Counted from the whole stretch's first letter, positions 1,169 to 23,553 are shown. The stretch: DNA of 63,794 nt, filler included, from Octopus bimaculoides (GCF_001194135.2; 8 parts of 7 records of this genome joined end to end with filler, not necessarily neighbours in it), one strand, 5' to 3'. A program made the numbers and translations. Notes: generated from the letters alone by a model not told the origin.

Positions 1169-2014
1169 NNNNNNNNNNNNNNNNNNNNNNNNNNNNNNNN
1201 NNNNNNNNNNNNNNNNNNNNNNNNNNNNNNNNNNNNNNNNNNNNNNNNNNNNNNNNNNNNNNNNNNNNNNNNNNNNNNNNNNNNNNNNNNNNNNNNNNNN
1301 NNNNNNNNNNNNNNNNNNNNNNNNNNNNNNNNNNNNNNNNNNNNNNNNNNNNNNNNNNNNNNNNNNNNNNNNNNNNNNNNNNNNNNNNNNNNNNNNNNNN
1401 NNNNNNNNNNNNNNNNNNNNNNNNNNNNNNNNNNNNNNNNNNNNNNNNNNNNNNNNNNNNNNNNNNNNNNNNNNNNNNNNNNNNNNNNNNNNNNNNNNNN
1501 NNNNNNNNNNNNNNNNNNNNNNNNNNNNNNNNNNNNNNNNNNNNNNNNNNNNNNNNNNNNNNNNNNNNNNNNNNNNNNNNNNNNNNNNNNNNNNNNNNNN
1601 NNNNNNNNNNNNNNNNNNNNNNNNNNNNNNNNNNNNNNNNNNNNNNNNNNNNNNNNNNNNNNNNNNNNNNNNNNNNNNNNNNNNNNNNNNNNNNNNNNNN
1701 NNNNNNNNNNNNNNNNNNNNNNNNNNNNNNNNNNNNNNNNNNNNNNNNNNNNNNNNNNNNNNNNNNNNNNNNNNNNNNNNNNNNNNNNNNNNNNNNNNNN
1801 NNNNNNNNNNNNNNNNNNNNNNNNNNNNNNNNNNNNNNNNNNNNNNNNNNNNNNNNNNNNNNNNNTACATACATACATACATACATACATACATACATAC
1901 ACACATACATACATACATACATACATATATACATACATACATACATACATACATGTATACATACACACATGCATGCATGCATGCATACATACATACATAC
2001 ATACATACATACAT

Positions 2015-3367: not shown

Positions 3368-3552
3368 AAGGTAGTGAACTGGCAGAATTGTTAGCATGCT
3401 GGATTAAATGCTTAGTGACATTTCGTTCGTGTTTACGTTCTGAGTTCAAATGTCACCGGGTTCGACTTTGCCTTTCATCCTTTTAGGGGTCGATAAAATA
3501 AGTTCCAGCTGAGTACTAGAGTCGATGTAATCGATTTAGTTCCTTCCTCGAA
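3368..3552 (+). mobile_element. SINE family B, 3' tail truncated at the junction with the GC-rich rDNA-linked block
   Basis: A-box-like ctggcagaattgttag, B-box gagttcaaat, family body ctttgcctttcatcc. Confidence 0.85.
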
Positions 3553-4160
3553 ACTGCATACGAATCGGGCCCGATAGGATCCACTGGGTCATCAGACCCT
3601 CCCGCATAGCCAAGGAGGACCCCGCCCCGTATAGCAAATGCGAATTACACAAAGTCGATGCGACCACCCGTACAGTTGACGCGAACCCCTGCATAGCTGA
3701 CGCGACTGCATGGACGCCCCAAAACCTACGTCTCAGGTACACGCAAACCAACTTGGTGCGATGGAATCCGCCAGGCTGCCCCTGAGCAACAAGGGAAGGC
3801 AGACAAGCTCTGCACCCTACAGACTGGGAGCATAGTTCGGAACCTTAACACACAAGCAGGATCATCCAGAACACAAAGAGGATCACCCAAAGATGATAAT
3901 ATACCTCCGATCGGCCTCAAACACGGAAAAAGTACCACCAATGAACGGACGCAACAACCGATGACCGACGATCCCAATACATCTCGGTCGTCTCGTCCCG
4001 GATCTAGCAGGCTCTCCCACGGTAAACGGTACCGCTATGAGAGATTGGGACGTTTTTAATTTTTCCAAATTGGAGGGACCAATTCGGTATGGTTGGATTT
4101 CCCGGCATAGCTCCGACCATGGAGTTAAGCTCTTTTATCGCGATAAGGTTGCGTCCCAGA
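3553..4160 (-). mobile_element. Putative 5' end (5'UTR and start) of a 28S-specific R2-type retrotransposon
   Basis: GC-rich non-rRNA sequence begins where 28S homology ends, at the canonical R2 target; no R2 protein motif seen. Confidence 0.55.
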
Positions 4161-4167
4161 AAGAGTC
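4075..4167 (-). ncRNA. Candidate HDV-like self-cleaving ribozyme spanning the 28S/R2 junction
   Basis: Manual fold gives P1, P2, P3, L3, P1.1, P4 and J4/2 in HDV order, with a few mismatches. Confidence 0.5.
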
Positions 4168-4555
4168 ATAGTTACTCCCGCAGTTTACCAGCAATTGGCT
4201 GAATTTCATCACTTTGACATCCAGAGCACTAGGCAGAAATCACATCACGTCTGTGCGGCTCAGCCGGCTACGCGAAGCTCTGTTTTAATGAGAAAGTCGA
4301 TTCTCCTGGTTCGTACCAGTTCCAAGTCGACCGTTCGGGGCCAGTCAAACACCTGCCTCACATCGTAGTGTGACGACCGATCCTACGCGAGGAGGAGCTG
4401 GATCGCGCGCACCGATGTGACGGTGAGCTCGAAGCCGTGTCGCCCACAATGTCCAAGGTGTGGGGCCCTGTTGATCGCACCCACTACGCCCCGGACTATG
4501 AAACCGCACGCCGCCAGACGACGGTATCCGAACGTGCTCAGAGGCGCTGCACGGG
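4161..4555 (-). pseudogene. 28S rRNA fragment: conserved core 4161-4345 plus probable GC-rich expansion segment
   Basis: + strand agagtcatagttactcccgcagtttacc...tttcatcactttgacatccagagcactaggcagaaatcacatc...gtaccagttccaagtcg matches the reverse complement of the conserved LSU core upstream of the R2 site; extent beyond 4345 is inferred from GC content. Confidence 0.85.
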
Positions 4556-5280: not shown

Positions 5281-5561
5281 NNNNNNNNNNAGCATAAACA
5301 GAGAGTGAAAAAAGCTTGTAGATTTCAGCGGTCCACCTTATATATATAGGTTATGAGAGGTAATGGTATTAAGCAGACCCAAAAGTGTCAGGTAACGTTG
5401 AGTAAGTGCTATGGACAGACTAAAGTTAAGCTCCAGGTTTGGTGATTATGTGAATGAGGAGTCCAACGTAGGTCATATATCAGCATGTCTATATATAAAA
5501 AAAATTAACAGAATGAGATAAAAATCCAGGGCTGTGAAAGATTTCAGAACATTTATAAATA

Positions 5562-5741: not shown

Positions 5742-6597
5742 GGATCTTTTTGGTTTGACGGGCAAAATTTTTCATTTATGTTTTATGTAGTGTTTTTGGT
5801 ACCGAAACACTTTCAAACTTCGTATACTTGTATATTTTGTGTTATAGAACAGATAAAAAATTTTGTATTCGAAATTATTTCATGTAAAAAATTGTCGTAT
5901 TTCGGTAATTTCAACCAATCACGGACGTCTATTGAGGTGAAAACAATTACTGCCGTAGAATGTAAACAACATATTCTAACGGTGTTATGGGATCTTTTCC
6001 CTTGAATAAAATTAGTGCCCTGTTTGTCAACAACAACTATCGGTGGTACTGTTATTTATGACATCGTTCGTGCGTTTGTACTGGTTTTAGCTTTAGGATT
6101 ACGGTTAGGGTTATGATTATTTTTGCCATAACCTCACTCATAACCTTAACCCTAACCCTAAAATCCTATAACTCATAACCCTAACCCTAACCCTAACCCT
6201 AACCCTAACACTAACCCTAACCCTAACCCTAACCCTAACCCCAACTCTAACCCTAAAACCCTAACCCTAACTCTAAAACCCGAACCCTAACCCAAACGCA
6301 CGAACGATGTTATAAATAACTACCGCCGATAGTTGTTGTTGACAAACAACGGCACTAATTTTATTCAAGGGAAAAGATCCCATGACACCGTTAGAATATG
6401 TTGTTTACATTCTACAGCAGTAATTGTTTTCACCTCAATAGACGTCAGTGATTGGTTGAAATTACACAAATACGACAACTTTAACATGAAATAACCTATT
6501 AGAAAAAAATGTTTTATATGACACATTCTACCAGTATCCCAGGTTTGAAAGTGTTTCGTTAAGAAAACAAGTGTTGCCCGTCAAACCAAAAAGATCC
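5742..6597. mobile_element. Foldback MITE with ~305-337 bp TIRs, 8-bp TSD CAGAATGG and a telomeric-repeat core
   Basis: Arms 5742-6078 and 6293-6597 are reverse complements; CAGAATGG at 5734-5741 and 6598-6605. Confidence 0.9.
6085..6293. repeat. Interstitial telomeric repeats: degenerate TTAGGG then (CCCTAA)n
   Basis: Many CCCTAA units at about 6145-6293; TTAGGG-like units at 6085-6117. Confidence 0.9.
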
Positions 6598-9579: not shown

Positions 9580-10008
9580 GGCAAGCTGGCAGAAACGTTA
9601 GCACGCCGGGCAAAATGCTTTGCGGTATTTCGTCTGTCTTTACATTCTAAGTTCAATTTCCGCCGAGGTCGACTTTGCTTTTCATCCTTTCGGGGTTGAT
9701 TAAATAAGTACCAGTTACGCACTGGGGTCGATGTAACCGACTCAATCCGTTTGTCTGTCCTTGTTTGTCCTCTCTGTGTGTAGCCCCTTGTGGACAGTAA
9801 AGAAATAAGAAACGTTAGCACGCCGGACGAAATGCTTAGCGGGATTTCGTCTGTCTTTACGTTCTGAACTCAAATTCCGCCGAGGTCGACTTTGCTTTTC
9901 ATCCTTTCGGGGTCGATAATTTAAGTACCAGTTGCGTGCTGGGATCGATCTAATCGACTGGCTCTCTCCACAAAAATTTCGGGCCTTGTGCCTAGACTAG
10001 AAAAGAAT
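9580..10008 (+). mobile_element. Composite SINE: B body + Tx1-like tail (9743-9809) + second, 5'-clipped B copy
   Basis: Two B bodies separated by a 67-nt linker; same structure at 59166-59586. Confidence 0.9.
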
Positions 10009-23105: not shown

Positions 23106-23553
23106 GTTACGAGCACCACCTTTTTGTATGTCTGTCTGTACGAGCACCACCTTATATGTATGTATGTCTGTATGTACGTATATACTTATGTATGCATGCA
23201 TGCGTGTATGTATGTCCGTATGTATAAATGAATGTATGAATGTGTGTATGTATGTGTATAATATATTGGCAGCAACAACAACAGAAACAACAAGGAACAT
23301 GTTTGTTACATTGCAGATCGCAATACACATTCAAATACAAAACAGAACGTAATACAATACACGCAAGGGCATTTGAACAATTACCCCCAAAAACACAAAC
23401 GGGTACACACCCAGACGAACGCACACATTTATAACAAAATTTTGACAGCAAGTAAATGATTAAGTGGAGTCAAAAGTTTCTGCGACTAAAAGAAATCCTC
23501 CACGTAATTGCTTTAAAATTCAGCACATCGAATGACTTGGCAAACACAACTCC

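What the first reader, a model, noticed from the sequence alone, without database searches (positions are those of the whole stretch)
4075..4167. HDV-like ribozyme fold at the 28S/R2 junction, with an apparently compensated U-A P1.1
Seen (minus strand, manual fold): P1 5' GACUCUU(U) at 4167-4160 pairs with (A)AAGAGCU, with a G1.U wobble and one A.C mismatch. P2 is GGGAC(G)CA/UGGUCCC. P3 is ACC/GAU with one mismatch, closing loop UUAUCGC (HDV: UCCUCGC). The loop UA can pair with the UA right after P1, replacing the usual CC/GG P1.1. P4 is closed by AUGGU/ACCAU, and J4/2 CCGAA supplies a candidate catalytic C. G1 lies 13 nt upstream of the canonical R2 site. Established: R2 5' ends encode HDV-like ribozymes that in many lineages cleave upstream, inside 28S sequence. 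Inference: a variant R2 ribozyme, possibly slightly decayed in this copy.
Basis: partly seen in the sequence, partly recalled or inferred. Interest (0 to 1): 0.75.

Follow-up and report, generated by a model that had tools for sequence, protein, structure and literature searches.

The report
Dead R2 ribozyme relic in octopus DNA
This is a decayed, stranded fragment of a ribosomal RNA gene joined to the front end of an R2 jumping gene in an octopus-type genome; it still shows most of the R2 self-cutting RNA fold, but the key catalytic base is lost, so it is an ordinary fossil.

Summary
The 5' half of the fold (P1, P2 5' strand, P3, L3, P1') is real. It is homologous to the 5' ends of published octopod and scallop R2 elements and to seven O. 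vulgaris genomic copies. A covariance model built without the window finds it as the only hit (39.4 bits, E about 1e-8).

CCGAA at 4087-4083 as J4/2 and UUGGUCCC at 4082-4075 as P2' have no equivalent in any relative, where that stretch lies inside a long P4. In six lineages P2 is fully paired about 30 nt further downstream, using five different helix sequences. On that model the ribozyme spans 4167 to 4047.

This copy has U4059 where every relative has the catalytic C, and a broken middle P3 pair (C4148.A4138). The "compensated U-A P1.1" rests on a G-to-A change found only in this copy.

The locus is not a live 28S/R2 junction. It holds about 390 nt of CpG-decayed 28S plus about 600 nt of R2 5' end, with no ORF and no 3' junction, among octopus SINEs.

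Verdict: a dead new member of a known kind. Whether cleavage falls at -13 or -11 is unresolved.

The parts
4162..4553 (-). [quoted passage not shown]
   Evidence: Rfam LSU_rRNA_eukarya hit. Local alignment to O. vulgaris/O. sinensis 28S flanks gives 82% identity; 37 of 70 substitutions are C>T or G>A, enriched at CpG (25/132 vs 12/126).
4161..4167 (-). P1 5' strand GACUCUU. G4167 is 28S -13. Predicted cleavage is 5' of G4167 (-13 register) or 5' of C4165 (-11 register).
   Evidence: Pairs with 4134-4128 as G.U, A.C and five Watson-Crick pairs. The same G.U + A.C is seen in all relatives.
4152..4157 (-). P2 5' strand GGGACG
Evidence: Six Watson-Crick pairs with CGUCCC 4052-4047.
4137..4149 (-). 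P3 (ACC 4149-4147 / GAU 4139-4137, middle pair C4148.A4138 broken) enclosing L3 UUAUCGC 4146-4140
   Evidence: Relatives have an intact P3: GCC/GGC, CCC/GGG, GCC/GGU, ACC/GGU. Their L3 is UUGNCGN (UUGAUGU in the scallop).
4126..4134 (-). P1 3' strand AAGAGCU (4134-4128) and the following UA (4127-4126), the candidate P1.1 partner of U4145 and A4144
   Evidence...AGAGCU followed by U is invariant in all 13 compared sequences, 12 relatives plus the window.
4064..4123 (-). P4 domain. The remaining closure is UCC 4123-4121 with GGA 4066-4064.
   Evidence: CM alignment. P4 closes as GUCC/GGAC in O. sinensis/O. vulgaris and lineage B, and the domain folds end to end in relatives but not in the window. 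The block is 20/20 identical to the O. vulgaris and O. sinensis elements.
4053..4063 (-). J4/2 by homology, AAAAUUAAAAA. U4059 occupies the position of the catalytic C.
   Evidence: Relatives: AAAC*UAAAC, CAAC*UAAUA, UAAC*GAA, CAGAC*GAAA, GAAC*AAAAA. The CM aligns the model C to U4059, and the pairwise alignment to R2-1_ORu agrees.
4047..4052 (-). P2 3' strand CGUCCC (homology model)
   Evidence: P2 at this position is 6/6 paired in six lineages with five different sequences; swapped partners give 2.83/6.
4075..4087 (-).
   Evidence: No CNRA + P2-complement of this kind lies inside P4 of any relative.
3550..4046 (-). Rest of the R2 5' untranslated region. It is GC-rich, collinear with R2-1_ORu for about 70 nt beyond the ribozyme and unalignable after that, and it ends at a SINE.
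   Evidence: No R2 protein remnants by tblastn or protein search.
3379..3538 (+). Octopus-type SINE copy that abuts the truncated end of the R2 fragment
   Evidence: 78% identical to O. vulgaris L001 14407-14565. Other copies in the window reach 90%.

Best explanation
Window 4553 to about 3550 (minus strand) is an old, non-functional orphan copy of an R2-inserted rDNA piece in an octopod genome. It holds about 390 nt of 28S ending 7-8 nt short of the R2 site, fused to the first ~600 nt of an R2 element related to R2-1_ORu, R2-1_OSi/OVu and R2-1_ECi.

The junction carries the relic of the R2 HDV-like self-cleaving ribozyme. It spans 4167 to 4047, about 121 nt:
- P1: 28S GACUCUU with AAGAGCU.
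- P2: GGGACG with CGUCCC.
- P3: ACC with GAU, around L3 UUAUCGC.
- A long P4.
- J4/2: 4063-4053.

In live elements (established for other R2 lineages, inferred here) the 28S/R2 co-transcript folds into this double pseudoknot. A cytosine in J4/2 catalyses cleavage inside 28S, at -13 or -11. The released R2 RNA keeps a short 28S leader that helps make uniform 5' junctions.

This copy cannot do that. The catalytic position is U4059, the middle P3 pair is C.A, and the P4 closing pair is lost.
For: Shown:
- A 28S fragment lies directly upstream.
- The region is 70.7% identical and collinear with the R2-1_ORu 5' end over 181 nt, and about 70% identical to R2-1_OSi (sequences from PMC13188248 Table S2).
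- Model R1, built from 7 O. vulgaris copies plus R2-1_OVu without the window, hits only 4158-4045 in the window (39.4 bits, E about 1e-8). It aligns its catalytic C to U4059 and its P2' to 4053-4048.
- P2 is fully paired in six lineages with five different helices at the equivalent place. P3 shows G-C, C-G, G.U and A-U at its first pair.
- 89.6% of cells are paired, against 26-54% for slid partners.
- P4 closes end to end in relatives.
- The decay signature is 82-85% identity to functional 28S with CpG-biased transitions.
- No R2 ORF and no downstream 28S are present.

Established: R2 ribozymes and cleavage upstream in 28S, including at -13 (Eickbush et al. 2013, PMC3774820).
Against:
- Only four to six independent lineages were available, so formal covariation is thin outside P2. 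One search found one compensatory pair.
- Relative sequences come from a supplementary table, not from fetched loci.
I cannot exclude that it formed in the RNA of this element's immediate ancestors.
- The P4 of the window does not fold closed in the MFE.
Confidence: 0.85

Rival explanations
1. The reader's compact fold is the true ribozyme of this R2 subfamily. J4/2 would be CCGAA (4087-4083, catalytic C4086), P2' would be UUGGUCCC (4082-4075), and P4 would be short, so the copy would still have its catalytic C.
For: - All the pairs exist.
- CGAA directly before P2' matches HDV and CPEB3 (own knowledge).
- The descriptor scan finds exactly this arrangement.
- The 20-nt block holding it is 20/20 identical to O. 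vulgaris/O. sinensis although the surroundings are about 70% identical.
Against: - In O. sinensis/O. vulgaris, O. rubescens, Eledone, the scallop and lineages B/B', no P2 complement follows that block, so it sits inside P4.
- In O. sinensis the alternative P2 (CGGGUUGCU/AGCGGCCUG, 9 bp) is unambiguous.
- The block's conservation is explained by its position inside the conserved P4 domain (a short ACCA/UGGU stem can be drawn in several lineages).
- The CM chooses the distal 3' half.
- P3 is broken on either model.
Confidence: 0.1
2. A chance HDV-like match: a relaxed descriptor fits random sequence next to a 28S pseudogene, and no ribozyme ancestry is involved.
For: The relaxed descriptor is expected 0.83 times per shuffled window. 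The MFE is not better than shuffles. No Rfam HDV-type hit was found.
Against: - Only 11 of 5000 shuffles match when G1 must lie in the adjoining 28S.
- There is clear sequence homology to R2 5' ends of five mollusc species and seven O. vulgaris copies.
- The CM hit has E about 1e-8.
Confidence: 0.02
3. A sub-question, independent of the above, concerns the pairing register. P1 may be only CUCUCUU/AAGAGAG with a C-G first pair, and the next C may pair with the L3 G as a one-pair P1.1. Cleavage would then be at -11 (5' of C4165), not -13.
For: - Mussel R2-1_LFo has GGC-AAGAGAG followed directly by GG opposite an L3 CC. Its internal P1 copy reads UACUCUCUU, with no G at -13.
- In O. vulgaris L019 8232-8299, tandem R2 5' ends start at CTCTCTT. 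L001 copies read ...TATGA|GG|CTCTT.
- This register removes the A.C mismatch that is otherwise conserved in all lineages.
Against: - G.U at the cleavage site is the rule for HDV-like ribozymes, and -13 cleavage is experimentally shown in Nasonia vitripennis R2.
- The CU after GAG and the following U are invariant, which fits either register.
- In the window, the L3 G-to-A change keeps pairing only in the -13 register (A-U), although this is a dead copy.
Confidence: 0.4

Closest known systems
5' ends of cephalopod R2 elements R2-1_ORu (Octopus rubescens), R2-1_OSi/R2-1_OVu (O. sinensis / O. vulgaris) and R2-1_ECi (Eledone cirrhosa), from Table S2 of Genome Biol 2026, PMC13188248
   Same: - Same order of elements, with about 65-71% identity over the first ~180 nt.
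- Same P3-L3-P3'-P1' core followed by U.
- Same P4-internal block.
- Same J4/2 motif position and same P2 position.
- The 5' junction TTTCTG resembles Eledone's TTTCCG.
   Different: - Those are full-length elements in 28S with ORFs; this is a ~600-nt 5' fragment outside rDNA.
- U4059 replaces the catalytic C, the P3 middle pair is broken, and L3 position 3 is A instead of G.
- There is a 2-nt deletion in the 28S CUCUCUU, with a matching G-to-A change in P1'.
- That paper does not analyse the ribozyme.
R2 HDV-like ribozymes that cleave inside 28S, especially the -13 cleavers Nasonia vitripennis R2 and Tribolium castaneum R2-B (Eickbush, Burke & Eickbush 2013, PMC3774820)
   Same: - The P1 5' strand is supplied by 28S.
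- G at -13 is the candidate +1 nucleotide.
- The 28S deletion at the junction resembles the 7-bp deletion fixed in springtail R2.
- P1 mismatches and weak P3 are tolerated in some lineages.
   Different: - The mollusc group has an A.C mismatch at P1 position 2 in every lineage.
- P1.1 is non-GC (G.U + U-A, or a single G-C).
- P4 is long (about 60-130 nt) with a conserved internal block.
- Cleavage has not been tested.
HDV genomic/antigenomic ribozyme and the CPEB3 ribozyme
   Same: Double-pseudoknot order P1-P2-P3-L3-P3'-P1'-P1.1-P4-J4/2-P2'. L3 has U...CG. J4/2 has C-N-A-A (own knowledge of these families).
   Different: No Rfam model of these families matches. P1.1 is not CC/GG. The catalytic C is absent in this copy.
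R2 SIDEs, non-autonomous internally deleted R2 elements (Eickbush & Eickbush 2012, PMC3414825)
   Same: An R2 5' end with a ribozyme but without the ORF.
   Different: SIDEs keep the R2 3' end and sit in the 28S target. Here no 3' end and no downstream 28S are present, so this is a truncated relic, not a SIDE.

Membership tests
HDV-like self-cleaving ribozyme (R2 type) | Nested double-pseudoknot order P1, P2, P3-L3-P3', P1', P1.1, P4, J4/2, P2' | tested here: met
   All segments are present in order at 4167-4047. The same order is seen in six related lineages.
HDV-like self-cleaving ribozyme (R2 type) | Catalytic cytosine in J4/2 (C75 equivalent, C-N-R-A before P2') | tested here: not met
HDV-like self-cleaving ribozyme (R2 type) | L3 with the conserved U...C-G (U20, C24, G25 equivalents) | tested here: met
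   UUAUCGC at 4146-4140. Relatives have UUGNCGN, except the scallop with UUGAUGU.
HDV-like self-cleaving ribozyme (R2 type) | Three-pair P3 closing L3 | tested here: not met
   In ACC/GAU the middle pair C4148.A4138 is broken. It is intact in all relatives.
HDV-like self-cleaving ribozyme (R2 type) | P1 of 6-7 pairs beginning with a G.U wobble at the cleavage site | tested here: inconclusive
   G4167.U4128 is possible but is followed by an A.C mismatch in every lineage. The alternative register has a C-G first pair at -11.
HDV-like self-cleaving ribozyme (R2 type) | Two-pair P1.1 between L3 and the nucleotides after P1' | tested here: inconclusive
   The window has A-U + U-A. Relatives have G.U + U-A (U.C in O. 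rubescens), or a single G-C in the other register. No covariation is seen.
HDV-like self-cleaving ribozyme (R2 type) | P2 helix supported by covariation | tested here: met
   6/6 pairs in six lineages with five different sequences. Swapped partners give 2.83/6.
HDV-like self-cleaving ribozyme (R2 type) | Self-cleavage activity | not testable with these tools
   No read data were available, and no biochemistry.
HDV-like self-cleaving ribozyme (R2 type) | Match to curated Rfam HDV-type models | tested here: not met
   No such family at E<=10 over 3900-4400. I did not check whether Rfam covers R2-type ribozymes, so a miss may mean little.
R2 non-LTR retrotransposon (element) | 5' junction with 28S at or just upstream of the R2 site | tested here: met
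   28S identity ends at -8 (4162), followed by an R2-homologous sequence.
R2 non-LTR retrotransposon (element) | Single ORF with zinc-finger/Myb, reverse transcriptase and endonuclease | tested here: not met
   No ORF, no homologs of any frame, and no tblastn match to octopod R2 proteins.
R2 non-LTR retrotransposon (element) | 3' junction with 28S TAGCCAAATGCC... | tested here: not met
   Absent from the whole window at up to 3 mismatches.

The most novel reading that the evidence does not exclude
Mollusc R2 elements, from scallop to octopus, may carry a distinct sub-type of HDV-like ribozyme. Its features would be:
- an invariant P1' AAGAGAGCU that forces either a conserved A.C next to the G.U at the cleavage site or a C-start at -11;
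- a non-GC P1.1;
- a long P4 whose conserved internal block (UCCAACCAUACCGAAUUGGU in the window), carrying a second C-G-A-A, serves as a separate functional module. That module could bind R2 protein, support translation initiation, or offer an alternative J4/2 that gives a second, switchable ribozyme conformer.
Probability: 0.2. Interest if true: 0.45.

Novelty: new member of a known kind. Interest (0 to 1): 0.27.

Why it matters
For this locus, little: it is a fossil, and R2 elements are expected to carry such ribozymes.

The comparison it prompted is more useful.
- It shows that published cephalopod and scallop R2 5' ends share one ribozyme design that has not been described.
- The design has an unusual conserved mismatch at the cleavage site and a conserved block inside P4.
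- Octopus genomes hold R2 copies, with short 28S leaders, outside canonical rDNA.

It is also a caution for manual folding: a conserved C-G-A-A next to a fortuitous complement gave a convincing but wrong 3' half.

Tried and rejected
- Rfam, gathering and E<=10: only the 28S fragment, no HDV-type family.
- Plain MFE folding of 4167-4070: no better than shuffles, as expected for a pseudoknot.
- Exact look-ups of three window ORFs, and a concatenated multi-frame protein query of 3539-4168: nothing.
- An 18-nt pattern from the conserved block against metagenome and viral contigs: 13 and 2 hits, all unrelated chance matches.
- First descriptor version: too loose, with low-complexity false hits, and it missed the intended P2 register. 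It was tightened.
- RNAalifold on lineages B/B': recovered P2 but otherwise a non-pseudoknot alternative, so uninformative for P4.
- MAFFT on trimmed 'mini' constructs: did not put P2 in one register because linkers differ. P2 was therefore counted by script.
- R2-1_OVu P2: could not be drawn from its table cell, because the flank is cut at 400 characters. The O. sinensis row resolved it.
- Preprint supplement: not held.
- Argonauta locus L002: no ribozyme or 28S.
- SIDE and a live rDNA junction: considered and rejected, since there is no 3' end and no downstream 28S.

Full report
**What is in the window**

On the minus strand, Rfam finds a single feature in 21.9 kb. It is a fragment of eukaryotic 28S rRNA that stops at ...ACUAUGACUCU (4162). 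No 28S sequence from downstream of the R2 site occurs anywhere in the window. There is no long ORF.

The window is a gapped eukaryotic scaffold with microsatellites, TAACCC repeats and many copies of a ~170-nt SINE. That SINE also occurs in Octopus vulgaris, at up to 90% identity.

Aligned to O. vulgaris and O. sinensis 28S, the 28S-like stretch runs from 4553 to 4162 at 82% identity. That alignment uses the flanks printed in Table S2 of PMC13188248. Of 70 substitutions, 37 are C>T or G>A, and these are concentrated at CpG (25 of 132 CpG positions against 12 of 126 other C/G positions). The universally conserved last ~200 nt are only 85% identical. This is an old, methylation-decayed pseudogene fragment in an octopod genome, not a working rDNA unit.

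**Checking the observation**

G4167 is 28S position -13.

As a pattern alone it is weak evidence:
- The nested MFE is no better than shuffles.
- No Rfam HDV-type model matches at E<=10.
- A descriptor relaxed enough to accept this copy hits only this site in the window, but it also hits 0.83 times per shuffled window.
- Requiring G1 to lie in the adjoining 28S brings chance down to 11 in 5000.

**Homology**

Table S2 of a 2026 survey of R2 elements (PMC13188248) prints 28S flanks and 5' UTRs for several mollusc R2 elements. These include R2-1_OVu, R2-1_OSi, R2-1_ORu, R2-1_ECi (octopods), R2-1_MVa (scallop) and others.

The window downstream of 4161 is collinear with the R2-1_ORu 5' end (70.7% over 181 nt, 14 gap columns). 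It is about 70% identical to R2-1_OSi.

Using the R2-1_OVu N-terminus as a protein query, I reached two O. vulgaris chromosomal loci, L001 and L019. They carry seven further copies of a second and third R2 sub-lineage, here called B and B'.

All of these share one core: P3, L3 (UUGNCGN), P3', then AAGAGAGCU followed by U. Lineage B' has UUAAGAGCU as P1'; the window has AAAAGAGCU.

A covariance model was built from the seven genomic copies plus R2-1_OVu, without the window. It finds exactly one hit in the window, 4158-4045 on the minus strand, at 39.4 bits and E about 1e-8. The feature is therefore a genuine relic of an R2 5' ribozyme.

In every relative, a long P4 is followed by a J4/2 of the form N-A-A-C-N-A-A and then immediately by P2'. 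P4 closes as GUCC...GGAC in O. sinensis/O. vulgaris and lineage B, as GUCU...GGAC in B', and with variant base pairs in the others. The P2 helices are:
- O. sinensis: CGGGUUGCU/AGCGGCCUG
- O. rubescens: GGA(A)CGC/GCGUCC
- Eledone: GGCGCC/GGCGCC
- Scallop: AAUUACU/AGUAAUU
- Lineage B: GGACAC/GUGUCC
- Window: GGGACG (4157-4152) / CGUCCC (4052-4047)

The inner six pairs are 6/6 in all six lineages, with five different sequences. Swapping partners between lineages gives 2.83 of 6.

P3 is intact in all relatives and varies at its first pair (G-C, C-G, G.U, A-U). P4 folds closed end to end in O. sinensis, O. rubescens, the scallop and lineages B/B'.

It is recognisable in O. rubescens, Eledone and the scallop. 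There it lies within P4 (a short ACCA/UGGU stem can be drawn in several lineages). In the window, GUCCC at 4079-4075 happens to complement GGGAC as well, which made the short fold look convincing.

**State of this copy**

On the homology model, J4/2 is AAAAUUAAAAA (4063-4053). U4059 aligns with the catalytic C of all relatives. A C-to-U change at this position is the classic inactivating change in HDV-type ribozymes (own knowledge; see also the silkmoth C-to-U control).

Other defects:
- The middle P3 pair is C4148.A4138, where relatives have C-G.
- The outer P4 pair is lost.

L3 position 3 is A here but G in all 12 relatives. The "UA/UA compensated P1.1" is therefore a private G-to-A change in a dead copy. 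In relatives P1.1 would be G.U + U-A, or U.C in O. rubescens.

The 28S CUCUCUU has lost CU, and P1' has a matching G-to-A change. P1 therefore stays continuous (G.U, A.C, then six Watson-Crick pairs). This may be a junction variant that propagated while the subfamily was active, as Eickbush et al. describe for other species. It may also be coincidence.

No R2 coding sequence survives anywhere in the window. The R2-like GC-rich stretch ends at about 3550, against a SINE.

**Mechanism**

Established for R2 in insects and other animals (PMC3774820):
- R2 is co-transcribed with 28S.
- The 5' end folds into an HDV-like double pseudoknot, often using 28S bases as the P1 5' strand.
- It cleaves 0 to 36 nt upstream of the insertion site. 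Cleavage at -13 is shown experimentally for Nasonia vitripennis and predicted for a flour beetle element.
- The retained 28S leader lets the cDNA anneal to the target, which gives uniform 5' junctions.

I infer the same for live octopod elements. For the window copy the inference is that it does nothing.

**Unresolved: the cleavage register**

All lineages have G(-13).U followed by an A.C mismatch.

Evidence for a -11 register:
- P1 would be only CUCUCUU/AAGAGAG with a C-G first pair, and the next C would pair with the L3 G.
- Mussel R2-1_LFo has AAGAGAG followed directly by GG, and has no G at -13 in its internal P1 copy.
- Head-to-tail R2 5' ends in O. vulgaris start at CTCTCTT (L019 8232-8299). 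L001 junctions read ...TATGA|GG|CTCTT.

Evidence for the -13 register:
- The general G.U rule for HDV-like ribozymes, and the precedent of -13 cleavage.

No covariation can decide between them, because all the positions involved are invariant.

**Novelty and score**

R2 ribozymes are well known, and cephalopod R2 elements were published in 2026. That paper does not analyse their ribozymes. I found no paper linking HDV-like ribozymes with octopus.

The window feature is a dead new member of a known kind, of low interest in itself. The mollusc-wide design is a modest lead for ribozyme specialists. Its features are the conserved A.C mismatch or C-start, a weak P1.1, and the conserved P4 block.

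Noticed in passing
window 6141-6297, with arms 5888-6019 and 6351-6482: About 25 copies of the telomere-type repeat TAACCC lie between two 132-nt inverted repeats that are 95% complementary. This looks like an interstitial telomeric array inside a foldback-like structure.
   Followed up: no
window 3379-3538, 9580-9959, 10565-10733, 11070-11150, 11460-12105, 21497-21842: At least a dozen copies of a ~170-nt SINE, including a dense cluster at 9.6-12.1 kb. They are 81-90% identical to O. vulgaris L001 14407-14577 and are the main clue that the window is octopod.
   Followed up: partly
L001 5651-5846, 16870-17034, 22953-23095; L019 2882-2975: In O. vulgaris chromosomes, R2 copies outside canonical rDNA are each preceded by only ~100-200 nt of 28S. 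In two L001 copies that 28S piece is joined at the same point to a fragment encoding an RT motif (..FEKAFDSVDR). These look like duplicated composite units or R2 arrays.
   Followed up: partly
L019 8232-8299 (also L019 13500-13620): Three tandem 21-nt copies of the R2 lineage-B 5' end begin at CTCTCTT (28S -11 to -5). They directly follow a ~130-nt sequence that also precedes a B' copy, probably an R2 3' end. This suggests head-to-tail R2 arrays and hints that the R2 RNA starts at -11.
   Followed up: partly
L001 17100-17200 versus 23170-23420: The J1/2 loop of the lineage-B ribozyme contains a 15-nt tandem repeat (CCTRGTATGTTATGA). Its copy number differs greatly between neighbouring copies.
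   Followed up: no
L003 527-760 (ENA metagenome contig ERZ27241762 k141_156375): An R2 element with what looks by eye like a -28-type ribozyme (L3 UCCUUGU, P1' CCCGCU pairing 28S GCGGG). It is preceded by only ~170 nt of 28S and then AT-rich non-rDNA sequence. This is another R2 with a short 28S leader outside rDNA, from an unknown animal.
   Followed up: no
window 4097-4078 and the equivalent in R2-1_OSi, ORu, ECi, MVa: A block inside P4 is conserved from scallop to octopus. It reads UCCAACCAUACCGAAUUGGU in the window and in O. vulgaris/O. sinensis, and a short ACCA/UGGU stem can be drawn in several lineages. It is absent from O. vulgaris lineages B/B'. Its function is unknown.
   Followed up: partly
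window 4135-4146: A perfect 12-nt palindrome TTATCGCGATAA spans L3 and P3'. It is created by the two copy-specific G-to-A changes (relatives read TTGTCGCGGCAA), so it is a by-product of decay rather than a site.
   Followed up: yes
window 1170-1865 and 5281-5290: Runs of N (assembly gaps) flank the contig that carries the finding. The reading frames listed across 925-2130 are artefacts of the gap and of TACA/TATA repeats.
   Followed up: yes
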